A stretch of DNA of 64,000 bases from Pelomyxa schiedti (lineage: Eukaryota; Protista; Evosea), in contig JAHLWZ010000562.1 of assembly GCA_020536535.1 (NCBI GenBank), positions 33,551 through 97,550 on the forward strand, written 5' to 3'. The notes under the pieces are model-generated. The model made no database searches. It had not been told where the DNA came from and worked only from the letters and a program-made list of their open reading frames with translations. Shown piece after piece: positions 30,639 to 54,895 of the stretch; position 1 is the stretch's first letter, and each line of letters begins with the position of its first letter. A program made the translations under genes and the position numbers.

Positions 30639-33600
30639 CTAGAACAGGGCGAATTTATGGCCAACACTCTTTGACAACCAAGGAGTCTGAGTACCTTTGG
30701 ACATGGACTGAACAAGAACCATAGTTTCGTCCATGATGTCATTGAACGGAGTGCTTGGTGCCGATCTCTCAAGAACTGTGTACTCAGGGGTTAATAGTCC
30801 GTGAGAAGAGGGATTCGGAAGGATGAATTGAGTGGGCATTGTGCGCGTGTGTTGTGGGGATCTGCAAGAGAGAGAAAGAGAGAAAGAATTTCAAATGAGA
30901 CACACCTTCAAGAAGACAACCGGTGAAGAACCCATGGTTTCTCCGATTCGGCAACTTGCATGTATCCCCGGTTGTTTTTCCTTGTGAGTGGTTGGTTGTG
31001 AGAAATTTACAATCGAAAAAAGAGGGAAAAGAACCTGGACTTGTGGGATAAATAACGATACAACCACTAGGGAAATCTTCCTTTGCCAATTGAGTGGTCG
31101 ATCCAAATCCTCGCGTCTGTTGAGAAAGGAGTGAGTCACTTGCTGCTAAGTACAACCAAACTGAATTTACGGGAAGTCAGGAAAAAGAACGGAAAATACC
31201 CTCGTTTCATCCTCGTCATCCGATTGACGGCAGGCATCAAGGATGCCAATCACCAGATCAGAATGCCGCTTTATCCCATCCAAAATGTCTCCAGCCATTG
31301 GCGCTTTGTGTTTCATCTTCTCGAAATTGGGTTCCTCAAAAGCAGCTGGATCCTCAGTCATCAGAAGGAAATTATGTCCTTTCAGTTGCCGCCCATGCCC
31401 AGCAAAGTAAAAGATTGTTGCAACCTAATGATGAACGATAAATTCTCCTGCATGGTGGGCACACTCACACACTGTGTTAGAAATATATCTTTGCACGGTG
31501 TGCGGTGATTTGTTGGCTTGGCCTGTACCTTATTTCCTGCTTTTCTTGTTCCCTTGAGGTTTGACTTGAAATCTTCCAAGTGACACACAAAGTCTTGGAG
31601 ATTTGGAACATTCATTTGCTGTGTCACTTGGAACTGACACTGATTGCGCAAAAACTAGAGGTGAAAGAGATTAGAAAGTCAGCGAAAAAAAAACATGAGA
31701 ACCTGTGCAACAGCCTCTGCGTCATTCAGAGAATTTGAAAGCGGGCACTGGCAGTAAGTTGCATTTCCGAGCACAAAAGCAAAGCACTTGTAATTGAGCT
31801 CTTCCCCTCCAAGTGCTTTTGCCAGGTCAACCCTGGGAGGCTGATGTTGTGGTGGTGGAGGCGTTTGGGTGGTCTTTGCGGCAAGGGCTGCTGTCGTTCC
31901 GAGAAAAGAGACCCTTGTTGGCGGCTTCAAACACAAAGATGCCCTGGGGAAGTAAGAACGATGAGGGTGAGGGTGGATTCGTTTGTTGTTGTTGTTTGCT
32001 TTTTTTTTAATTGTCCGTCACCTGGAGGAAATGGTCCATCGTCTATTGCGAGTTGTTGTTGCAGCAGAAGAACTGGAAGAAGAGTTCAAGTTGTTGATGA
32101 GTTCTTCCACGATGAACTCGGCGTCACCAAGGATGATACCCAGGGCGCATAATTGTTGGACGGTGTAGTGTGCAAGAGTTCTGCCACGCAGTTTGTGTGC
32201 CTGGATGATCTTCAGGCAGCTCTCTTCAACTCCTTTGGATTTCAGCCAATTATAAGTTTGTTCTGCATCAGCTGTCTGCAGGTCAAAAGTGAGCGGTGCA
32301 TTTTCCACTGATGTTGTTAAAGGTGGTGGCAATGGTGGAGATTGGTGTCGGTGCGGCGACGCAAGAGGCACGTTGTTTGGAGGAGGCACAGTGACTTTGC
32401 CAGGTTCCACTGTTTGTTGCATCAAGTGTGGTGGTAATTGTGGTGGAAGTGGGGCAGGTTGAACTGTGCAGCAGTACTCAGATGTCAAAGGCCTCCAGTC
32501 TGTGAGTTTAAAAAGAGTTTGGGCAACACAATTTAGTGGAAAAGCAAGCCAAGCACTTTGGGGGAATACACAACCACAAAGATCATCTTGTCTTGGAACT
32601 GGTGAAAAAACGGTGCAGGGCTTATGCGGAAACATGGGAGGTACTATCTTATCTTTCAGTCTTTCCAATTTGGAAAGTTTTTTCTGCAATGAAGAAGATG
32701 GGGGAGGGAGTCTTGCCTTCTGAGTCTCCCTCACAAGAGCAAAAAAAACTTCATCGACATTTGTGTTCAATTTTGCACTGACCTTTTGTTTTTGTCATGT
32801 CATTCAAAGAGAACAGGGATATTTCATGCTTTAGACACAGACCTCATAAAAAGGACAATTCAGCTCTCGTGCGAGTTGTTCTCCCTCGGACTTGGAGACC
32901 TCTCTTTGTCTGTCCAAGTCAGACTTCGCACCCACCAACACTATTGGAGGGCTCTTGCAATCTTTAATAGTTCTAATCCGCTCGTAAAGGTACTTTATGT
33001 CTGCAAACGATCTTCGGGATGTTATGCTGTACCTATTGTGAAAGTAAGCAGGTTTCACACTGGTATCATTTCTCATCACCCAAGAGAAAACACCTCAGAG
33101 TGTCTAATATATTGATCTCTGAGGAGACTATACCTGTTGTACAGGGATTGAGAAATGTGAATTGGGGTTTTTTTTTTTTTTGGAAACGTAACTCTTCCTG
33201 GCCGGCTTGGAAAATTCAGTTTGTTAGTTAAGGGAAATACCCCCAAAGAGATACCTGTATCAATGATGTGAAGTACAAAAACATCATCACCCACTCTAAG
33301 TTCTACTCTTATGCAGAGTGAGAAGAAATAATTGAGAACGTGAGCCATACCGATACGAATCTTCGACAGTGGGGTCGTACTCTAGAATTGTAAAGAAAAG
33401 AAGGTTGGCAGAGACATTTTACCGGAACAAAAGCAATGCTGAATCATAAGGTGAACCACACAAAGAAAGAGTTTGGGGAGTAACCTGTACAAATCTGACT
33501 GCCATAGCTGTGGTTTGATTATTAAGTATTGAATTCAAGAGAAGCAAGAAAGTAGTATTTACCGACCCGACTTTGCTCCAACTGCTCCACTTCCAAGGAG

Positions 33601-36010
33601 ACATATCTTGATTTCTCTGCTGCATTTTTTTTCCTGGAAAACTGGCTTCGAGAGCAATTTATTCGCAAACAACTCGGCAGGGTTTCCACCTAAATCCAGC
33701 AAGAAATCCTGAGGGGTGTGGAATCTCTTTTCCAGATGGTTGCAAATTGCCAGGGCACCAAGCTCTCCAATTCCACACTTCTTCAGGATCAATGATTTCA
33801 GCAGGTGGTGTGGATTGGCGTCCAAACCAACCGCAATGAAAATGGCCCCATTATCTGCAAGAAGGAGGTTCTCACTGAGATCAACTTCAGACAGGCTCTT
33901 GTTGAACGCCAACATTGATGCGATGACCAAGGCATCATTGGGAAGAAGGTTGCATCGCTGCAAAGAAAGAAGGGAGAGTGTTCTCGAAGTGATGATAGGT
34001 GCCACCAGTTCGCTCAGATGTTTTGTGTTCACACCCACCAAAAGGAGCTTGTTCAGGAAAAATGCATGTGGTGAAATTGACGAGATCACTTGGTCACAGT
34101 TTTGTTGTTGTTGTTGCCCCTCCTCGACAGCCTCTTCTTGTGCACTTTTGTTGTTCTTGTTGGTGAATTTGGATGCGCTCCTCGATGTTTGGGTTGCAGT
34201 CATCAGGGCAGTTTTCGAGGGTCCCCCTTCAATTCTCAGTTCTCCAGTCACAACGCCAGGAGGAATGACAGAAAGGTATTTCACAGCCAGAGAGTCCTCC
34301 AAACTGAATTTACAGCACACTTGACAGCAATATGCAGGCCCCCACCTCAAAACACAAGATGCGAGTGTATCAAGGATGGTGGCACTGGTTCCGTTGTCTA
34401 GATTTAACAGGCAGAAGACTGACTTGTTCGACATCAGCAATGCTTGAATCAATTTCTCCTTGCTGCGGTCAACACCCAAAATCCCAATGCTCCCACAAAT
34501 CGACTCCCTATTTGTTGGTTATTTTTAGTTCAGCTTCTATTGAGGAGGTATATTAAACCTGGCATTGGAAAGATTGCTTGGAGTATTTGCAGCAATGTAA
34601 GGTGACGAAGAAGAAGAGTCCACAATTAAGCTGTACAGAAAATGGTTGATCAGCGATGTGGTTGACAGTGCTGCTCCCGCTCCTTCTTGAATGTAGCCAC
34701 CAACCAGTATTGCTTCTGCACTTGAGGAATCCTCCTTGCCTGTGAATTTACATATGTATGTGTTGCTTCAGTTGGGCGTGTGATAAATTTCATGGAAACC
34801 ACCCACCAATGTCATCATAGACATTATCAGATCTGTTGGCCTTTCTTTCCAGAAGAGTGCTGTTTTGCACTCCCATTTCACCCAAAGGCCCACACCACAC
34901 AGCCCTGACAAGCCCAATATCCACAGCTCGGTTTACCTGTGGTGTTGGTGAAGTGATAAGGCGGCCATATTTTAAAAATTAAGTCATGACTGAAGATAGT
35001 TCCTTATATAAGAAATATATAATACATATATTGATTTGATCAATTAGCCAGAGGGATGGATTAATGACTTACATCAAACGATGTTGGATCCCTGGGCACC
35101 ACTGAGAAAAGAAAACTGACTGTCTGCTCTGGTTCCAACCAAATTAACTTTTTGAAGGGATTCAAATGCAATCCAGAGTCCTTTATCATCAGAGGAGGTG
35201 GGTGTGGTTGCCAGGTTTTAACGAGTGTGGACGAGTAATGCTCATGCAGATCCATTGAGACAGAGTCAAGAAGCAACGATTTGTGTGATTCATTTTTAAT
35301 TCCTGCCTCCACAAATAGGGAGGAAGGTGACAGCTCACACACCTAAAATTAAAATTTGTTATGAGTGAGGGGCCATATATATTGGCTTGGCAGGAACCTT
35401 TGCTGTTACGGAAAGTGCCATTTGGCACTTAAACCTGAACATCTTGGTGTGACTTCTTCTTGCTTGGCCAGACAAAGCTAAGCACCTCAGAATATAATGC
35501 ACTGGTTCCTCCAGTGTGAAACTGACAGGAATTACTGAGCCCACTTTTTTTTTTTTTTTGGAGAAAGAGTCAACACAGAAACAGACTTTACTGGATACAT
35601 GAACTCAACCAAGCCATTGTTAAAAGAATATATGTATGTATAAACAGATAAATACCACCGGGATCCAACAGGGCGATGGAATGGGTGGTCTTTGAAACAA
35701 TTTTAGGGGTTGCAACGTCAAAATACCCCACATCCACCATGACCTCCACATCATGAAGTCGTTCTTCAGTCGAAGTGTTAATCACGTTTATGAGAACCCT
35801 CACTTCCTCGCCACAGTAAGCGATGGAAGTGGATTCACAAGGAACCACCAGGCTCCCTCCCATAATCCCTGACGCGGACGCCGCTCCATCTCCATCTCCA
35901 CCACCACACCTTGGTTTCGCGACGGCGTCAACCGAATGTGGAATACATGGCGCCACGCAAAACGAAGGTTTTCTAAGTCTAAGAACTTTGATATCCACGA
36001 TTTCACCCAT
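30639..36010 (-). CDS. Putative single gene: TRAPPC13(DUF974)-like - RNI-type LRR - Ras - Pro-rich - SAM - caspase-like (peptidase C14, paracaspase-type)
   Basis: TRAPPC13-like: IKVLRLRKPS, YCGEEVRVLINVIN, KMFRFKC, LFVEAGIKN, IGLVRAVWCGPLGEMG. LRR: LSLQRC..VDLSEN..LILKKCGIG. Ras: YDPTVEDSY, DTAGQEEYSLLRDQY. SAM: TYNWLKSKGV..LRGRTL..LCALGI. C14: AFVLGNATY..LSNSLNDA, FYFAGHG, ILDACR, HGFFT..L, QTPW. The junctions checked (TRAPPC13-like/LRR, within Ras, SAM/C14) are bridged in frame by GT-AG introns. Confidence 0.7.
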
Positions 36011-41881: not shown

Positions 41882-44223
41882 TTAGGGATTGTTTGGTGCT
41901 GGTTGTTGGTTGGTGTTGGGTGTTGGTTTTATTTTTCGGTTTCTTTTTCGTTTCTGGTTGGTAGCTTGTTGTTGCTGCGGCTGAACTTGGGTGTGCTGTG
42001 TTGCTGCGGGTGTTGGTGTAACGATTTGTGGATTGCTGTTGACCGCTAGTACTGGCGGGAGGGTAGTTTGTATTGGTTGTGCCTGTGTTAGTGTTTGAAT
42101 TTGCTGCAGAAGTGGCAGCAGGTCATTGTTTATCTGTTGTTGTTGAATTGCGGCCGCGAGTTGATCAGAGAGTGTGTGCATGGTCAAATCGAGGCTACTG
42201 GTGGCTGATTTCAATTCGCTGAAGGAATCAATCAGTTCCCGAGCAAAGGTGCTGTTACTCCCTGGATCAGTCGGCATAGCTTCTTTTGTTGCACATGGTG
42301 GTTCTTGTGGATGTGGAATTTCTGTTGTTTGCGGGGGAATTGATGAGGATTTCACAGCATCGCTGGGCGGAGTTTCAGGCACACAAGCGGAGCTGGGCTG
42401 TTGCGAAAGGGCTGGAGTGGGATTGGGTTGATCAGTATCGGTTTGTGTTGATACTTGGGTGGATTGATTATGTGTATTTATAGGTAATGTTGCGCTTGTT
42501 GCCGGCTGATTTGCTGGTGCCGGTGTCTGTGTAGTTTGCTGCAGACGGCTTATGGCCGACAGAAGCTTGAGCCTTGCTCCAAGCGATATAACTCCAAGGG
42601 TTTCCAAGTGGTGTTCAGTAATAAATGGCAGAGCTTCAAGTGTGACTTCTTCTCTCACAAACTGCGGAGTTAAGCCATCCAACCCAAGCTGGTGTAACCA
42701 TTGGCCAACGCTCGTATAGTGCGTAGGGTCTCTGACTTTTACAGCTGGTGGTGCCACAGGTTTTTTTATAACTGTTTTCTTGGCCTGGTGTTGTTGCTTT
42801 GCTTCAATATCGCGTAAAACCCGACCTAGGTCAAGAAAATATAACTCTTTGAAAAGTCTCGTCCCGTTGCCGCCACCAAATACAACTAAGAATCCGTTTT
42901 CACAAAGAGTTGCAGTGTGCGTGCATCGTCCAGTAGGTGCCGCACCCACAATAAGAGATTTCATCCTGGAACAATATGAATGATGGTTTTGGGAAATAGA
43001 ATTACCATGTGCATGTAGGAAACGATGTGTCCAAGAAGTAAACATCATTCAAAGTCTTTCCGCCATCACTGCCACCAAAGAGGACCAATTTTGAGTCCAA
43101 TGTGGACATGGTGTGCCCAGCTCGGGGAGACGGCTCATCTCCATCTATTTTGGCCACCTTGTGGTGGTGAGGTTTTTTGTTGTACACAGGTTCCGACTAG
43201 GGGGAATACCTGAGACCAAGAGAGCGTAACAGTGTCAAGCTCATATAGATCATTTAACATTTTGCCTCCATCATGCCCCCCAAAAATCTACCAAAAGATG
43301 AGATAACTGCACAAAGAAGTATATATGACCTCACCAACATTTTATCTCCAACAAGTGCTGCAGTGTGTCCCCACCTTGGAGTAGGTGGTGACCCTGATAC
43401 TGCAGGCCTTGACCAAGCCATTGTATCTATATCCAAAACATATGTATCATTGTAGAGGCGACTTGGGAAGTAAGGCTACAGTGATGAGGGTGTGGCCTAC
43501 CTGTCGTCACCCCCGCCAAAAACGATTAAACTCTTTCCAGCAAGCACTGTAGTGTGCCGAGACCTTGCAGCAGGGCTGGTTCCAGCCACATAGGCCTGAG
43601 TCCACGTGAGACTCCCAACATCTAGCAGATGCACATCATTCAAGAAACTAGAGCCTGCACCACCCCCTAAAGAAAAAAATCCACAGTAAGCCCTCGTAGA
43701 CGAAAAAAGCACAAGGAGATACAAACCGAATACGTATAGAATCTGTCCCACAGTGGTGGTTGTGTGTCCTGAACGTGGTACAGGTGCATTCCCAGTTATT
43801 TCCTGCCCTTAGTCACTCACCACCCAATCAATAAAAAAGGATTATATTTATATTACACTGCCACGCTTTCCCACACCCTTTTTCCCAACAAATCAATAAA
43901 AGTAAACAAACAACAAACCAGTAGCAACAAATTGCACGTCCACGAAGTCAAGTAGCCCATCCCCAACACACACGGCAACGCAGTTGCAATTCACAATTAC
44001 CAACTACTATTACGCAACACAATATGCAACTGCGGCGCCCAGTGGGCGCACATACAGGGGTGTCCCACCGCATTGTTGCCAGCCTCAGCGTCGTGACCTC
44101 GTTGAGCAGCTGGCTGCCGTTGAACCCCGCGAACATCCACAACATCCCCCCGCACACGTTGATCGTGTGTCCGCATCTGGGCCCCGGGCCAACCCCACTG
44201 CAACTGGGCCGAGTCCACGCCAT
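41882..44223 (-). CDS. Kelch-repeat protein with a SAM domain and low-complexity tail
   Basis: Repeated PxPRxGHT..FGG units (GPRCGHT, AARSRHT, TPRWGHT, SPRAGHT, TGRCTHT). SAM: SVGQWLHQLGLDGLTPQFVREEVTLEALPFITEHHLETLGVISLGARLKLL. Confidence 0.85.
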
Positions 44224-46562: not shown

Positions 46563-49500
46563 TTAGCCCAGGACTTTGCCTTCGCGGAGGAGCTTGGCCC
46601 ACATGTCACAACAAGCCTCGGTTTTTTTCCATGCTGTGGATATGTATTCAACCTGGGTGTGTGGTTGGGTTAGAATTGCTTAATTGTGCTTGTGTGGGGT
46701 GGAAGATGAGGAATCGGAACCTTTTCTTGAATACTGTCACAGAACGTGCGATCCCGCCATAGGAAGAACACATTGCCAATGTTCAAAACAGTCTGGAGGA
46801 ATTAGTAATTTCAGAGGACATAGCGCGGGGATATACCAGCTGGCAGGCGTGGCATAGAGCATTCCATGTACTACCGGTTGGCGCTTCTGCCACTACATAG
46901 GTGTCTGTGCCAACCGCAAACATTCCTGGTACTGGGTTTCGTAGGTATTCAATAAACCTACCGATTCCTGGAGAAAGCACATTTTTCCACGAAGGAGGTG
47001 ACGCAATCATCACATTGGGGGGTGATATTTGTCCCATTGCACACCAGATTTTATCTTCTGGGCCCATCGCCTTGAAAGAGTGACAATACAGAAAAAGTTA
47101 GGTGAGTATTGTACCTTAACCCAACCATCCCATCTGGAGCCTTGGTCGACAGCCGCAATTCTCCACTCTCTATTCAAAGTTAGGGTAAATTAGTAAGATA
47201 TGACAACATGGCCGGTTTTATAGTCTCTGGTTGTCCAGGTTCCGTTGTAGTAGTTTTCTGGTATTGAGGTGCAAATCTTGAAAACGTATCAGTAAAACAG
47301 AGACAGATGAGCGTAACCTACTTGGCATACTGCTTACAACTAACCGAGACATCTCTCCACTGCTTACATGTGCAAGCACAGGCATTGAGATCAGTAACAC
47401 TCAAGTAGCTTTACAAATTACAATGAGAAAAGTTAACTTCCAAGGCCGAACCTGAAGATTATTGCAAGGCATTCATTTGGTAAGCCCTGGTCAATTTGAG
47501 CTGTTATACGCTCCTTGGCAGCATTTTTGTCCCTGAGTAACTGTATGCACTCGGTAAACGGTGGAATGTGGTGTACAGCCATCTGTGGTACACACTAAGA
47601 CTCACAAGCAATAACAAAGTAATTATTACCTCATATGGTGTAAACCCCAGGTGGTCCTTTGCGCGCATGCACATATCTGCACCCTTTCCAGCGAGACATT
47701 CCAGGAAAACAGTGCTCTTGTTATGTGCTGCAAGGTGGGCCAAAGAGTAATCCCCAGACACATCCCATTCAGCTGAGGAAAGAGGTATCGTGTCGAACAC
47801 TTGTTGAATGAGTTCAGGGTAAATGAAGAGAAGGTGGAGGGGGCTCCACTTTGTTGGAGAAGTGATCAAAGACTTGGACGTAGCACGAGGGGAGCGAGGA
47901 GGTGTTGTATCAGTTGAACTAGGGCAGGCTTCAGCAGGTGGGGAGGCAGTAACATTCTGAGCCATGCAGGTGGCAATAACCTTTAAAATCTCTTTTACAA
48001 CGTCAATCTGTTTGTATGACAGTGCAAGATATAAGGCGTTGTAGCCTGAAGGGCCAATGACATCTATCAATACCTCCGAGTGACGCACAAACCACAAGGC
48101 AAGATTGGTCTTTTTGCGAATTATGCTTGACATGAGGGGGGTAGTCATATCGGCTAATGTTGCATTGACGTCTGCTCCAACACTGCACAGCAACTCAGCT
48201 ATCTCTGGTGACTGAACAATATGAAGCACAGGTTTTCCATCAGAATCGCACAAGCCCTTGACATTGACACCTGGGGCAGACACAGCAGCCTTCATAACCG
48301 CAATATTATCCTGGGAGGCAAGAAGCGGAATGGCGCAGTGAGGATCAACACCCACTTCGAGCAACTGAAATGCTAAGTCGTTATTTTTGTGATGTGCAGC
48401 CCAAAACAGTGCGTTTTTCCCTGTACTGTCCTTATGGTTCACGTTAATCTTCGGAAGTTTTGTTATCCAGGCGGCAACGTCATGCTTTCCGCGAACAATT
48501 GCAGAAATTAGTGAGGAGTGCTGTTTCTTCCCTTTGGAAATTGCATTGAAATCTGCTCCAAGTGAAACCAGGAGTTCAGCTGCCCGAATACTATTAATTT
48601 TATGCACAGCATTCTTTAAGGAAATCGCGCTTGCTTCCACTTCCCCGAGGTTAGGATGAGACGTTGACACTAGATGAAGTAAATCAGCTCTATCCAATTT
48701 GGCCATAGCTCGCAAACAAATAGCAGTTGGCTTTGCCCCAGATGATAAAAGATATGCAGAAATTGCCAAGCCTTCATGCGTAGTATTGGTCAAGGATCGC
48801 TCCAATGCAAGGGATAGAGCAGTAGTGTTCTGCTCAGCAAATCCTGGAGAAGTAGCTATGAGTTCCAAACCAGGGAGCCAGCTGACTTCCACTGCGCACA
48901 TAAGTGCTGTGACTTTCTCCTCGTTTGAAAGGCGTGGGCACTTTAAAATGCATCCAAGGCAAGTTCCATTCTTTTTTTTCACAGCAAAAGAAGCTGGGGA
49001 TTGTAAATTTGGATCAACTCTGGTGCATTCCAATAAAGTGGAGAGAAATGACGCAGGAGCTTCGTTCTCTATTGCAAAGTGTAAGGCTGCTTCATTTGCC
49101 GGTGTCAAAGCATTTACGTTAGCATCTGGTTGCTGAAGAATTGCCCTTGCCATCGCAAGGGAATGCGGTCCGGCTGCACGAAGAGCCACAAAGTGCAACG
49201 GAGTAAACTGGGAAGGAAGCCAGCAAATATTAAGGCAGTCAGGAGCGCATGTTGCCAAAGTTTGTACACAAGATACTTGATTACACATTATTGCAGTGAG
49301 AATTGGGGTATAATTTTCTCTATCCCTTTGGCTAAATAGTGTACTTCCCATTGCACGAGCAATTGATGAGAGACAATCTGCACTGCCAGACTATTTGTAC
49401 AGTGAGTTGTTTGTGAATTGGGTGGTGATAAACACACGTAGGCAGCCAGATGTGCCGGGTTGTACTCATCAAAATTCACAAGAGCTCCTGTGTTATTGGC

Positions 49501-50286: not shown

Positions 50287-50819
50287 TTTTGTTTAAATCA
50301 TAATAAACAGCATTAAAACACGTGAAATTACCCAACGAGAAAAAATGTGGCCAAAATAAAAAAAAAAAAAAAAAAGAGGGAATGTACATTTTTGGGGCTG
50401 GATGTAGCAGGACACGCTTTTGTTGCTCCACTTGCAGCAGCCTCTTTTTTTGGCGGGGCCGATGTGAACGACTGTGGTTTGGGGTCTGCCCGCTTCGCTG
50501 TCGTTCTCATCGAATAGATTGGTTTCTTTTCTTAACTTGATTTCTCACTGTTCGGCTAAAAAAAAACCCGCCTTTTCGAGAACCGAATCTTTGAGTTTCC
50601 TCTTGTGTTACCTGGTAAGTGACTATGCAAGTTCTGTTTCTTGTGTGTCAAGTTCCTGTGCTGTCACACAAACCAAATGTGGGTTTCTATGGTCCACACA
50701 GGTTTCCTTCTGGAAGGTACACTGTAGGTTGTGTTTCAGTACAAAAAAGGAATGAGAAACAAGAAAACATCTATTTTCCTGAGTGTGTTGGGAACTGTAC
50801 AAAGGGTAATTGTAGGAAT

Positions 50820-51872
50820 TCAGGAGGAGCCCAGCAGGTCACGCAGTTGCATGTCAGCCTTCTCGAACCCACCAGCAGCAGAGAATTTGTACCACCGCAC
50901 TGCCTCACGCATGTCCTTCTGAGTCCCGATTCCACTCAGCACACACCTGGCCACATTGAACAGGGCAGAGGGCGCACCCTGCTCCGCACTCAAGTGGTAC
51001 ATCCTCAGTGCCTCGCGGGTGTTCCGCCCCACCCCATTCCCCTGTTCCAGGCAAATTGCAAAGTTATTCTGTGCGTCCCTATATCCCTGTGCCGTGGCCT
51101 GCAAGTACAAGTGGATCCCTCTCTTCTGGTCCATTTCGACGCCAACCGCGTGCAGATAGCACCACGCCAGGCTGTACTGTGCATAAGCATTGTTCTGGGC
51201 AGCGGCCGCCGAGTACAGCGACACGGCCTGCGCCAGGTCCTTCTCGGTGTCGACCCCCTTCTCGTATATCTGGCCCAGGTTGTACTGCCCAAACGAGTTG
51301 CCCAGCGACGCGGACACGCGGTAGTGCTCGATGGCCTGCGCGTTGTCCAGCGGCACGCCCATCCCGTGCTGGTGGCAGTACCCCAGCGAGAAGTGGCCCC
51401 AGCTGTCGCCGAAGTCGCACGCCAGCCTGTAGTGGTGCACGGCCCGCGGCAGGTCCTCCGCGTTGCCCAGCGGCCAGAAGTACGAGCACCCCATCAGGAA
51501 GTTGGCGAAGCCCAGCACCTTGGGGCCGGCCGCGGGGCCGCCGGCGCAGGCGAGCCGCAGGACGTCGACGAGGTAGGCGCGGGAGGCGGGGCTGCAGGAC
51601 TGGGCGATGGCGAGCAGGTACTCGCGGGGGTAGGTGTCGACGGCGGCGCCGCGGAGGTAGGCCTCGGGCCGCGTCTGGAAGATCACGCGCATGGCGACGT
51701 AGAACAGCGCGCTGCCCTCGTGCTGCTTGACCTCCTTGCTTACGGTCGCGGGCGTGGAGACAGGAGACGTGGTGGTGGCCTGGGGGCAGATGGCGTGGCA
51801 CGTGCGCATTGCCTGCTCGAGGTCCCCGTTGGCCAACTGCGTCAGGAGCAACACCCCAAGTTCGGTCTTCAT
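50820..51872 (-). CDS. Sel1-like repeat protein
   Basis: About six SLR units, e.g. GQYNLGQIYEKGVDTEKDLAQAVSLY and AQNNFAICLEQGNGVGRNTREALRMY. Confidence 0.9.
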   Translation of the reverse strand: MKTELGVLLLTQLANGDLEQAMRTCHAICPQATTTSPVSTPATVSKEVKQHEGSALFYVAMRVIFQTRPEAYLRGAAVDTYPREYLLAIAQSCSPASRAYLVDVLRLACAGGPAAGPKVLGFANFLMGCSYFWPLGNAEDLPRAVHHYRLACDFGDSWGHFSLGYCHQHGMGVPLDNAQAIEHYRVSASLGNSFGQYNLGQIYEKGVDTEKDLAQAVSLYSAAAAQNNAYAQYSLAWCYLHAVGVEMDQKRGIHLYLQATAQGYRDAQNNFAICLEQGNGVGRNTREALRMYHLSAEQGAPSALFNVARCVLSGIGTQKDMREAVRWYKFSAAGGFEKADMQLRDLLGSS

Positions 51873-52084
51873 AGTTGCCAATTAGTTGCTTTTATCTCCT
51901 ATCTATTAATCTTGCCCCCAAAACCAGACTGGCAGGCAGTTCTTCTCTGCACACTGAGCAGTGACTGGGGAAGGTATCCCCAGGATTATGGTTATCCCCG
52001 GTACTCAAGCCAGAGATTCCTCATGATTCCATCCGAGAAGAGAAAGGAAACAACACAACAGTAACGTGCACCCCACTGTGGGCG

Positions 52085-53572
52085 TTGTGGGCCCGAGACC
52101 AAGTTGGTGCGATCGCGGCTGCGTCGGCCTCTCGTGGCCGCGTCGCATCCCCGACGACTACCACGGTGCAGGCGCACGGCCACGCGATCGCGCAGCTGCT
52201 GTGGGCCTACGTCGTGGCGACGCAAGTGACCGTAATAGTCAACGTGGTTGGCAGGATGCAGAACAGCGACGACGACTACGACGGCGACGAAGACGACGAG
52301 GACGAGGACGAGGAGGACGAGCAACCGGCCCAGCAGGCGCACCCCCCCAGGGAAGACCCCGATAGCCGCCGGTCGATGTTCTTCAGGGTGTCTCCTCTCC
52401 TCCTCGGGGGCACAAGCGGCGTCGAGCTGAGGCCCTGGCGCCTCGAGTGGGTCAACGACACCCACGTGGCGCGGTTCAGCGACGACCTGCACCCGCGCCT
52501 GCTCCTCTACAATGCGCCGCCGCCGCCGCCGACGACGACGATGGCCGCCTCGGCCGCGGCCCCCGCCACCACCGCGATCAGCAGCCGCGGCGACAGGGGC
52601 AGGGGCAACGGCTGGGGGATGGGCAAGCCGGACGGCCGCGTGCAGGGGCCCAGGAGGAAGAGGCTGACCGCCGAGATCAGCGGGGTCGGGAGGTTCCACG
52701 TCCTGCAGTACGAAGTCAGCGAGGCGTGGATTGCAGAGTGCGGGTCCGGAAGTGCCGACGAGGACGGCTCGTTGTGGCTGCTGATTCAGCCATCCAATCC
52801 TCCTCCTCCTTCTTCTTCTGCTACTTCTACTACTACTACTGGTGGTGCTACAACACCTACTTCTTCTAATTCTTCTTATGTTGTTGTTGATGGAAACATG
52901 GAGCAGCTTGTGGTTGTTCGACTTCCATATGCAAAGAGAACTCATGGCGTACGCGGAGTGATGTTCAACAAGCCAGCACCAAATGAGGTAATCCTGTCTG
53001 TGAGTCCATGGGCACACAAGGGTACTGTGTTCTTTGTGTTAATTGACGCCGCCAAGACGCACGCAACAAAGAGTCTCACTGTGATTGGCTCCACGTGCTT
53101 CCAGATTGCTGACAATCAGCATATCAGCAAAGCAGTGCATGTACGCAGGAACACTGGCAGTGGATTTTTCGTTGCCGAGTGTGCAGTGCAGGATGATGAC
53201 CATTCTGAAGTGTGGCACATAGAGGAAACCACTGGAGAAAAGCGGGTTCTGGCCACCTCTGATGACCCACTGTCCTTGTCGTGGCTGGGCCAAACAAAGT
53301 TCATTGTATGCCATTCTGCACCAGGTGAACCTGCCTATGAAGTGTGGGATTGTTCAATCATACCGCCAAGGTCACTCTCATGCAACACAAGCTCAACAAG
53401 CTGCACAAGTGATATGACCTCTGTGCAAGAAACTGTGGCTGAATCATGCTGTGTTATACAACCCATCCAAGGCACACTTGCGATTCGTGATGCACTCACA
53501 AGCTTCACTGTTCTCACAGTCACATTCCCTCAGTGGAACTCCCTTTTTATTGATGCCACTTTTTCCTTCTGA
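52085..53572 (+). CDS. Lineage-expanded hypothetical protein (N-terminal ARDQ..RGRVASP motif, beta-rich C-terminus); start codon unresolved
   Basis: Intronless 495-codon ORF. ARDQVGAIAAAS..RVASP..AIAQLLWAYVV and FRVSPLLLG parallel the neighbour at 53713. No in-frame ATG upstream of the motif, so a 5' exon may be missing. Confidence 0.7.
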   Translation: MWARDQVGAIAAASASRGRVASPTTTTVQAHGHAIAQLLWAYVVATQVTVIVNVVGRMQNSDDDYDGDEDDEDEDEEDEQPAQQAHPPREDPDSRRSMFFRVSPLLLGGTSGVELRPWRLEWVNDTHVARFSDDLHPRLLLYNAPPPPPTTTMAASAAAPATTAISSRGDRGRGNGWGMGKPDGRVQGPRRKRLTAEISGVGRFHVLQYEVSEAWIAECGSGSADEDGSLWLLIQPSNPPPPSSSATSTTTTGGATTPTSSNSSYVVVDGNMEQLVVVRLPYAKRTHGVRGVMFNKPAPNEVILSVSPWAHKGTVFFVLIDAAKTHATKSLTVIGSTCFQIADNQHISKAVHVRRNTGSGFFVAECAVQDDDHSEVWHIEETTGEKRVLATSDDPLSLSWLGQTKFIVCHSAPGEPAYEVWDCSIIPPRSLSCNTSSTSCTSDMTSVQETVAESCCVIQPIQGTLAIRDALTSFTVLTVTFPQWNSLFIDATFSF

Positions 53573-53712
53573 AGTGACCTCAACAACTAATTGTTGTATT
53601 ACCCCATGATTCAGCCATAATCAACAGACCGGAACGCAACGTCGTGGGCCGCCCAATCAACTATCACCAGACCCGGCTGTGAAAAAAAAAAACATCTTCA
53701 CAGAACGCCATA

Positions 53713-54895
53713 ATGTTAGGGTGCGCCCGCGTGGACGGTGCAATCGACGCACGTGCGCAGTTCGTGGCTGTGGGCGCCGGGGTAATTGTGGGACGGTGCG
53801 GGGCGCACAGCGCGGCGCGGATGCTGAGCCCGCAGCTGGCGTCGGACCTGGGCCGGCAGTGGATCGTCTGCCGGGCCCGCAGCGGGTTGTTCAAGCTCAT
53901 ACAATCCACGTCTGTCGCGACATCCGAGTTCGTCGCCGGGTTCTCTGTGTCCCACACGCTGGGGCTCGTCGACCCCGTCGCCGAAGTGTGCCGAGGCGAC
54001 GTCGTCGCCTGGGTTCAGGGGAGTGGCGGCTGCTGCGGTGGGGGTGGGGCCAGGGCGGCGCGGGCGGATGCCGATTGTGGGAGGCGCAGCCCGTTCAAGC
54101 TCGCGGTGGTGAGGAAGTGGGTCAATGGGAGCCAGGCGAGGCTTGCGTTATGGGATGTGGAGAGGAACTCCGAGGTGAGGCTGGGCGCCCCCGACCAAAT
54201 TGTGGATGTTAACGACGTGGTTCTGTGCAACCGCAAATGGATGGTTGTTTTCACGTTCGGGCATATCGTAATCAGGAAAATGATGCCCATTGGCCTGCCA
54301 TCATCATCGTCAAAGCCCACCGCCAAGCCTCCCCACATCGCCATGATCGACAAGCCAAACTGGCTGTCGGGAATGATTCTATCTGATGAGGATTCCGTAG
54401 CTGTGATTCAGAAGAATACGTGGCAGTGGGATGACTTCTCCCTCCTCATTATCGACTTGCCCAAATCACACGCCACGGGTACCTTGTCCTGCGCGACCAG
54501 GCCGGTGAAAGGCCAGCAGCAACGGCTGTGGTGTTACGATGGGAAGCTCTACGTTTCCTACTTTCCGGATTCCACATGCCAGTGCATCGAATGCGTAACA
54601 ACAGGGCAAAGAATATCCGTCATCGAGCCAATTGGCACCCTCACCCACATAGGGGGTCCATTCTACACCCTCCCCAATGGTCTTGAGGACAGCTCATCAC
54701 TCTACAACATGAATCACCCTCCTGGCAAGGTACTGCGCGTCGTGGAGGGAACAAGCTCAAGGACAACAAAGTGGGTGAACCAGCTCAATTCAACAGACTG
54801 CTCCCCAGTCATTTGATGTTGCAGATGCAGTCTCTGGAATCCGTATCTTCACACTCCAAACAACAGCTGCCTGTGGCCTTTGCGGTGTTTTCTGA
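53713..54895 (+). CDS. Second member of the same family (ARAQF..RCGAHSAARMLSP; CNRKW); 2-nt frameshift near the C-terminus relative to its duplicate
   Basis: ORF 53713-54816. 'cagctcaattcaacag' at 54781 versus 'cagctcatgattcaacag' at 55801; the duplicate shows the in-frame end ..CGLCGVF*. Confidence 0.7.

What the first reader, a model, noticed from the sequence alone, without database searches (positions are those of the whole stretch)
30639..36010. LRR-Ras-SAM-caspase-like protease fusion, possibly headed by a TRAPPC13-like domain: candidate single-chain sensor/switch/protease
Seen in sequence: the SAM exon (..WTISSR) is joined by a GT..AG intron (~31944-32021) in frame to ASLCLKPP..AFVLGNATY. 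This peptidase C14 domain keeps its dyad: His in FYFAGHG (~31395) and Cys in ILDACR (~31230). Upstream are a Ras domain (YDPTVEDSY, DTAGQEE; atypical P-loop GSGAVGAKS and G4 GAKSD) and RNI-type LRRs. Established: caspase-fold proteases are activated by induced proximity, SAM domains oligomerise, and LRR plus NTPase plus effector is the logic of NLR/apoptosome immune receptors. Dictyostelium paracaspase is a stand-alone domain. Inference: a small-GTPase-gated, SAM-polymerising protease for protist immunity, cell death or endosymbiont control. I do not recall this architecture being described.
Basis: partly seen in the sequence, partly recalled or inferred. Interest (0 to 1): 0.9.

Follow-up and report, generated by a model that had tools for sequence, protein, structure and literature searches.

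The report
Amoeba GTPase-SAM-paracaspase fusion gene
The anaerobic amoeba Pelomyxa schiedti has one gene that joins a trafficking-complex domain, leucine-rich repeats, an oddly altered Ras switch, a clustering (SAM) module and an intact MALT1-like protease; it is a unique member of an undescribed family of about 23 SAM-protease genes and may be a signal-triggered protein cutter.

Summary
The window is Pelomyxa schiedti. 36010-30639 (minus) gives a stop-free 21-exon, 1324-aa model whose last 1275 aa equal public model KAH3761129.1: TRAPPC13 (N+M, no C domain), RI-type LRRs, Ras, Pro-rich linker, SAM, C14 protease. The protease folds closest to MALT1 (Z 24) and keeps His, Cys and three acidic S1 residues, so it is probably Arg/Lys-specific. 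The gene is a chimera of three native families: a TRAPPC13 duplicate, a 14-locus LRR-Ras family and a SAM-C14 cassette at 23 loci with different front ends (LRR, MORN, Sel1, ankyrin-PARP). Two paralogues carry SAM and C14 in one exon, and another shares the disputed intron. The odd GTPase motifs are inherited, not decay: 10 of 14 LRR-Ras share the P-loop insertion and all 14 lack the G4 Asn. No SAM-C14 protein was found outside Pelomyxa and no paper describes it. The scan noted the SAM-C14 family earlier on other contigs. SAM-driven dimer activation is the likeliest mechanism; GTP gating and an immune role are untested.

The parts
30639..36010 (-). Whole gene: 21 exons, 1324 aa; residues 50-1324 are identical to KAH3761129.1, which starts at a later Met
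35398..36010 (-). TRAPPC13 N-terminal domain (exons 1-2); ATG 36010 is the better start because the Pfam match begins at residue 4
34807..35342 (-). TRAPPC13 middle domain (exons 3-4); introns 2 and 3 sit at the same places as in the full-length TRAPPC13 gene on contig C83; the C-terminal domain is absent
34740..34806 (-). Intron 4 (67 nt), the TRAPPC13-to-LRR junction; if retained, TGA at about 34790 ends a truncated TRAPPC13
34559..34739 (-). Exon 5, Ser-rich linker, stop-free, no in-frame ATG
34508..34558 (-). Intron 5 (51 nt, phase 2); the LRR-Ras paralogue P0014 has a phase-2 intron within one codon of this place
33628..34506 (-). Ribonuclease-inhibitor-type LRR unit with a polar insert
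32720..33609 (-). Ras/Rap-like GTPase domain over nine small exons, 42-48% identical to KRAS, Rap1, RIT1; no CAAX because it is internal
33568..33594 (-). P-loop with a one-residue insertion between Gly and Lys; shared by 10 of 14 LRR-Ras loci
32918..32929 (-). G4 motif with Ala in place of Asn; all 14 LRR-Ras loci lack this Asn
32500..32574 (-). 75-nt in-frame intron without a stop; Ras end and SAM lie in one open frame whether or not it is spliced
32309..32461 (-). Proline-rich linker
32069..32287 (-). SAM domain of the family-specific type (28 hits in the genome)
31944..32021 (-). SAM-to-protease intron, 78 nt, phase 2, in-frame TGA at 32020-32018; no ATG inside it and no in-frame ATG in the next exon
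30642..31798 (-). C14 paracaspase-type protease domain, complete from first to sixth strand
31395..31397 (-). Catalytic His
31230..31238 (-). S1 Asp (MALT1 Asp462 position) and catalytic Cys
31721..31723 (-). S1 Asp on helix 1 (MALT1 Asp365 position)
30964..30966 (-). Asp at the MALT1 Glu500 position, by profile alignment

Best explanation
One gene, built by exon shuffling from three native gene families, encodes a regulated Arg/Lys-specific cysteine protease. Shown: domain order, open reading frame, intact dyad and S1 residues, MALT1-like six-stranded fold, purifying selection, family context. Inferred: the protease needs dimerisation like MALT1; the SAM supplies that clustering, as the constant partner of the protease in the family; the variable front end decides where and when clustering happens. 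Here TRAPPC13 (N+M) would tie the protein to TRAPP-type membrane traffic, in place of the myristoylation-like start or MORN repeats of other members, and LRR-Ras would hold it off or release it on binding a partner. The Ras keeps switch I, switch II and G5 but has altered G1 and G4, so it is more likely a fast-exchanging or partner-binding module than a classical GEF/GAP timer. My odds: LRR-Ras-SAM-C14 is one chain 0.93; TRAPPC13 head included 0.8; active protease 0.85; SAM-driven proximity activation 0.55; nucleotide state gates it 0.3; role in defence or symbiont control 0.3.
For: Stop-free model equal to the public one. SAM and C14 in one exon in P0004 and P0008; phase-2 intron at the matching place in P0016. 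23 of 27 related C14 loci have this SAM within 1.3 kb. Front ends differ: LRR, MORN, Sel1, ankyrin+PARP_reg. pS 0.67-0.89 against pN 0.22-0.27 to 12 paralogues. Best structural match MALT1, Z 24.0, rmsd 2.6 over 208, above metacaspases at Z 18.8 or less; profile E 7e-28. MALT1 needs dimerisation and uses Asp365, Asp462, Glu500 for Arg (PMC4357240). SAM multimers are needed for SARM1 function (PMC10252437). LRR-Ras unit 41% identical to stand-alone P0014 over 544 columns.
Against: No RNA evidence obtained here. Many SAM domains do not polymerise, and only a monomer was modelled. Bacterial orthocaspases, the nearest sequence relatives, can self-activate without a trigger (PMC5756287). The full architecture exists at one locus in one genome. 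Unchecked scan notes report several other GTPase fusions in this same window, so fusion is a habit of this genome and need not mean tight functional coupling.
Confidence: 0.55

Rival explanations
1. One reading: the Ras is a working GTP/GDP switch that gates SAM polymerisation and protease firing, as the NTPase does in NLRs or the Roc domain in Roco proteins.
For: Switch I, the G3 motif with its Gln, the P-loop Lys-Ser and G5 are intact; Ras fold at pLDDT above 90 in its second half; the altered motifs are conserved across diverged paralogues, which points to a kept function.
Against: No other retrieved SAM-C14 member has a GTPase, so the cassette works without one.
Confidence: 0.25
2. Integrated-decoy reading: the TRAPPC13 and Ras copies are baits that mimic host trafficking and signalling proteins; their modification by an intracellular microbe releases the SAM-protease.
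For: Both are diverged copies of host proteins with a normal copy elsewhere; the effector-facing switch I is kept while the nucleotide pocket is altered; the host lives with several prokaryotic endosymbionts (PMC10579272).
Against: The Ras changes are older than the fusion and are shared with LRR-Ras genes that show no linked protease; no sign of rapid diversifying evolution was tested; no effector is known.
Confidence: 0.12
3. Two genes: a truncated TRAPPC13 gene ending at about 34790 and a separate LRR-Ras-SAM-C14 gene.
For: Retaining intron 4 gives a stop; intergenic gaps here can be about 130 bp (stop 30639 to the neighbour's ATG 30508).
Against: Exon 5 has no in-frame ATG; the first usable Met (34434) would cut about 26 residues conserved with P0014; intron 5 matches P0014's first intron; the TRAPPC13 copy stops exactly where its C domain should begin; the public model joins them.
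Confidence: 0.18
4. Artefact or dead gene: a chimera from whole-genome amplification or assembly, or a neutral fusion on its way to loss.
For: The genome came from amplified single cells (PMC8887013).
Against: No 32-mer of the gene occurs in any fetched locus from another contig; all parts are far diverged from their paralogues; the Ras-SAM junction lies inside one open frame; 20 introns splice to a stop-free 1324 codons; purifying selection on SAM and C14.
Confidence: 0.05

Closest known systems
MALT1 (type 1 paracaspase, MEROPS C14B)
   Same: Best structural and profile match; six-stranded caspase fold, His-Cys dyad, acidic S1 residues at the three known positions.
   Different: No death domain or Ig domains; SAM sits where MALT1 relies on BCL10 filaments; only about 22% identity.
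Type 2 paracaspases and metacaspase-like proteases of non-metazoans
   Same: DxCR motif, no metacaspase-type extra strands in the model.
   Different: Described as protease domain only (PMC5978004, PMC5756287); this one is the last domain of a 1324-aa, six-part chain.
Bacterial orthocaspases (C14 with TPR, Sel1, WD40, FGE domains)
   Same: Nearest non-Pelomyxa sequences, 29-36% identity over the protease only; repeat domains fused to C14.
   Different: Their protease is N-terminal in the hits seen, none has this SAM, and the Pelomyxa genes are intron-rich and form their own branch (SH-aLRT 98, quick tree).
SARM1 (ARM-SAM-SAM-TIR)
   Same: Repeat sensor, SAM oligomeriser and enzyme effector in one chain (PMC10252437).
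   Different: One SAM, a protease instead of a TIR NADase, extra Ras and TRAPPC13 units; analogy only.
Roco proteins (LRR-Roc-COR-effector)
   Same: LRR, then small GTPase, then effector; weak Roc Pfam hit (1e-13).
   Different: The GTPase is Ras/Rap-type (Ras Pfam 4e-46), there is no COR domain, and the effector is a protease.
NLR and apoptosome receptors
   Same: RI-type LRRs resembling those of NOD2 and NLRP3 upstream of a caspase-fold effector.
   Different: No STAND ATPase; LRR lies before the NTPase; protease in cis.
TRAPPC13 (TRAPPIII subunit)
   Same: N and middle domains, two shared intron positions with the genome's full copy.
   Different: About 30% identical to that copy, lacks the C domain, fused to other units.

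Membership tests
Peptidase C14 (clan CD) | Caspase fold with His-Cys dyad | tested here: met
   Pfam 84 bits against cut-off 21.4; model and fold search
Paracaspase-type C14B | Six-stranded sheet without the two extra metacaspase strands | tested here: met
   Predicted model ends after the sixth strand; MALT1 Z 24.0 against metacaspases 12.6-18.8
Paracaspase-type C14B | Acidic S1 pocket (MALT1 Asp365, Asp462, Glu500) | tested here: met
   Asp at all three aligned positions; by alignment, not by assay
Paracaspase-type C14B | Arg-specific activity that needs dimerisation | not testable with these tools
   needs biochemistry
Type 1 paracaspase (MALT1 orthologues) | Death domain and Ig domains | tested here: not met
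   none in Pfam scan
Type 2 paracaspase | Protease domain only | tested here: not met
   multi-domain chain
Amoebozoan paracaspase clade | Groups with Dictyostelium or other amoebozoan paracaspases in a tree | not tested
   no such sequence came back, so the tree cannot tell vertical descent from bacterial transfer
Ras family GTPase | Ras fold, effector loop, G3 and G5 | tested here: met
Ras family GTPase | Canonical P-loop length and NKxD motif | tested here: not met
   one-residue insertion and Asn to Ala
Ras family GTPase | GTP binding and hydrolysis | not testable with these tools
   needs biochemistry
Roco proteins | Roc followed by COR | tested here: not met
   no COR in Pfam; a helix and Pro-rich linker follow the GTPase
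NLR / STAND receptors | NACHT or NB-ARC ATPase | tested here: not met
SAM domain | Five-helix SAM fold | tested here: met
   pLDDT above 90; Z 10.6, rmsd 1.4 to PHC3 SAM; Pfam below cut-off
Polymerising SAM domains | Head-to-tail ML/EH assembly | not testable with these tools
   only monomers could be predicted
TRAPPC13 | N, middle and C domains in one stand-alone subunit | tested here: not met
   C domain absent; full copy on C83

The most novel reading that the evidence does not exclude
A unicellular anaerobe has independently built a repertoire of about 23 single-chain receptor-proteases on a SAM-paracaspase cassette, and this member couples protease firing to the state of a Ras-like switch with a new P-loop geometry, parked on TRAPP-positive membranes to sense intracellular bacteria or trafficking damage.
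Probability: 0.2. Interest if true: 0.9.

Novelty: new variant of a known kind. Interest (0 to 1): 0.68.

Why it matters
Non-animal paracaspase-type proteases are described as bare domains. A family in which one is tied to a SAM and to exchangeable sensor-like front ends suggests that sensor-cluster-protease signalling arose separately in a single-celled eukaryote. The SAM-C14 unit is small and can be tested directly for proximity activation. The LRR-Ras family, with a conserved longer P-loop and no G4 Asn, is a separate testable oddity in GTPase biochemistry.

Tried and rejected
Because the reason was not given I also left out a typed DNA-pattern search for the P-loop. My joined 1324-aa model was assembled only inside scripts to check the frame and was never sent to a search; searches used single exons or the public protein P0001 that a tool returned, so the first 49 residues were searched only as part of exon 1. 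The look-up of encoding contigs returned nothing for P0001 and P0014. Paper searches for Pelomyxa with caspase, paracaspase with SAM, and archamoebal C14 found no description; a review of atypical small GTPases does not mention such a P-loop insertion. The careful tree did not finish; the quick tree is cited, and most of its outgroup rows are unnamed metagenomic hits. The TRAPPC13 part was not folded (both jobs used) and has no PDB sequence match. Rejected: separate C14 gene (no start codon available), stop read-through (the stretch has intron features and a paralogous intron), metacaspase, Roco, NLR, recent decay of the GTPase motifs.
Full report
Source. The genome has 52.4 Mb in 5337 contigs, as published for Pelomyxa schiedti (PMC8887013). 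A search with the SAM exon returned this gene's public protein, KAH3761129.1, 1275 aa, named only 'gtp-binding protein rit1'.

Gene structure. Hand-placed GT..AG introns from ATG 36010 to TAG 30639 on the minus strand give an open frame. With the public choice of one acceptor and one extra 75-nt intron the model has 21 exons and 1324 codons, and residues 50 onward equal the public protein exactly. The earlier ATG is preferable because the TRAPPC13_N match starts at residue 4. No RNA reads could be examined, so splicing rests on sequence logic, paralogues and the public annotation, which used transcriptome data but whose support at this locus I could not see. My joined model was not used as a search query.

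The three junctions. Ras to SAM: the end of Ras, the Pro-rich linker and SAM lie in one stop-free frame of 258 codons, so no splicing assumption is needed. SAM to protease: the 78-nt intron holds an in-frame TGA. It contains no ATG, and the next exon has no in-frame ATG, so the protease exons cannot start alone. In paralogues P0004 and P0008 SAM runs into the first protease strand within one exon, and P0016 has a phase-2 intron after a similar linker ending. TRAPPC13 to LRR: exon 5 is open and lacks an in-frame ATG; the first Met at 34434 would remove about 26 residues conserved in the stand-alone LRR-Ras P0014, whose first intron matches intron 5 in phase and within a codon in place. This join is the least certain, about 0.8.

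Domains. Pfam on the public protein gives TRAPPC13_M, Ras, a weak SAM_1 and Peptidase_C14. The SAM-C14 model (mean pLDDT 83) matches MALT1 best (Foldseek 6e-13; Z 24.0, rmsd 2.6 over 208 residues), then caspase-9, with metacaspases lower, and its first 80 residues match SAM domains at Z about 10. A profile of the family and its nearest relatives finds MALT1 at 7e-28 and caspases at 4e-10 or weaker. Asp residues align with MALT1 Asp365, Asp462 and Glu500, which set Arg specificity (PMC4357240). The LRR-Ras model (mean pLDDT 77) matches Ras/Rap GTPases at 42-48% identity and RI-type LRRs such as those of NOD2, NLRP3 and RanGAP at Z 17-19.

Family context: the protease cassette. The catalytic exon finds 27 related loci in the genome and the SAM 28; 23 of the C14 loci have this SAM within 1.3 kb, mostly with the same exon layout. 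Annotated members carry different front ends: LRR (P0002, P0009, P0019), MORN (P0004, P0008), Sel1 (P0018), ankyrin plus PARP regulatory domain (P0005), and unknown regions. Seven of 18 begin with a myristoylation-like motif by a rough pattern from memory; this gene does not. Against 12 paralogues, synonymous differences are near saturation (0.67-0.89) while non-synonymous are 0.22-0.27: old duplicates under purifying selection. Outside Pelomyxa, the best hits cover only the protease, at 29-36% identity, and the named ones are bacterial. The SAM found no outside partner, nor did the Atlas show a SAM-C14 cluster. The Pelomyxa sequences form one branch, but without amoebozoan paracaspases in the tree the origin stays open.

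Family context: the GTPase. The LRR exon finds 14 LRR-Ras loci. Ten share the extra residue between the P-loop Gly and Lys, four have the normal length, and all 14 lack the G4 Asn. So these features predate the fusion and are maintained. From general knowledge, not tested here, the G4 Asn contacts the guanine base and the P-loop backbone, so the two changes may be coupled and probably weaken or speed nucleotide binding.

Family context: TRAPPC13. A full-length TRAPPC13 lies on contig C83. The window copy is about 30% identical, shares two intron positions, and stops where the full gene enters its C-terminal domain. TRAPPC13 sits at the joint of the TRAPPIII arms in a complex that activates Rab1 for traffic and autophagy (PMC8204870).

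Mechanism. The most likely reading is a proximity-activated Arg/Lys protease: MALT1-type enzymes need dimerisation, the SAM is the fixed partner of the protease across the family, and SAM multimers drive SARM1. The variable front end would set location and trigger. Orthocaspases that self-activate (PMC5756287) show that proximity control is not guaranteed. A defence or symbiont-control role fits the host's biology (PMC10579272) but has no evidence here.

Novelty and verdict. No paper was found on these proteins. Earlier scan notes describe the same SAM-C14 family from two other contigs; I confirmed the family myself. New here are the five-domain chimera, its assembly from three families, and the conserved P-loop and G4 changes. 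Other notes on this window list further GTPase fusions (unchecked), which suggests that such shuffling is common in this genome and tempers the surprise. It is real as far as sequence can show, undescribed, single-locus and mechanistically untested: new variant of a known kind, interest 0.68.

Noticed in passing
L058-L071 (contigs C562, C1082, C944, C1038, C471, C795, C866, C934, C582, C1009, C839, C171, C4, C361): A 14-member LRR-Ras family: 10 have a one-residue P-loop insertion, all lack the G4 Asn. Worth a finding of its own. (My notebook says 12 for G4; the alignments show all 14.)
   Followed up: partly
P0017 (L005/L023, contig C694): 1263-aa model with two C14-like domains and a different, canonical-scoring SAM between them.
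   Followed up: no
P0005 (L021, contig C865): Ankyrin repeats plus a PARP regulatory domain directly ahead of the SAM-C14 cassette.
   Followed up: no
P0007 and P0131 (contig C721), P0012 (C448), P0010: Public models that end after the SAM or start inside the protease although the DNA continues into C14 exons; probably split annotations, or real truncated forms.
   Followed up: no
L038 (contig C388, about 1400-1500): One protease exon is on the opposite strand to the rest of the gene, a local inversion; probably the copy described in s1-411120.
   Followed up: no
L001-L003, L006, L007 (contigs C511, C165): Other C14 genes that score higher in Pfam but are not close to this family; possibly metacaspases.
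   Followed up: no
window 41882-43048 (-): Exon with a Kelch repeat and a canonical SAM domain, unrelated to the family SAM search.
   Followed up: no
window 47504-49351 (-): 615-aa ankyrin-repeat ORF.
   Followed up: no
window 50619-54816: G+C-rich stretch (up to 0.64 against 0.45) with long ORFs on both strands and no Pfam hit.
   Followed up: no
window 35544 and 35535: Two in-frame acceptors for intron 1, 9 nt apart, just after a run of 16 A; the public model uses the upstream one.
   Followed up: partly
window 30905-30776: Last intron has an inner AG near 30861 that would give a frameshifted, shorter tail lacking the sixth strand.
   Followed up: no
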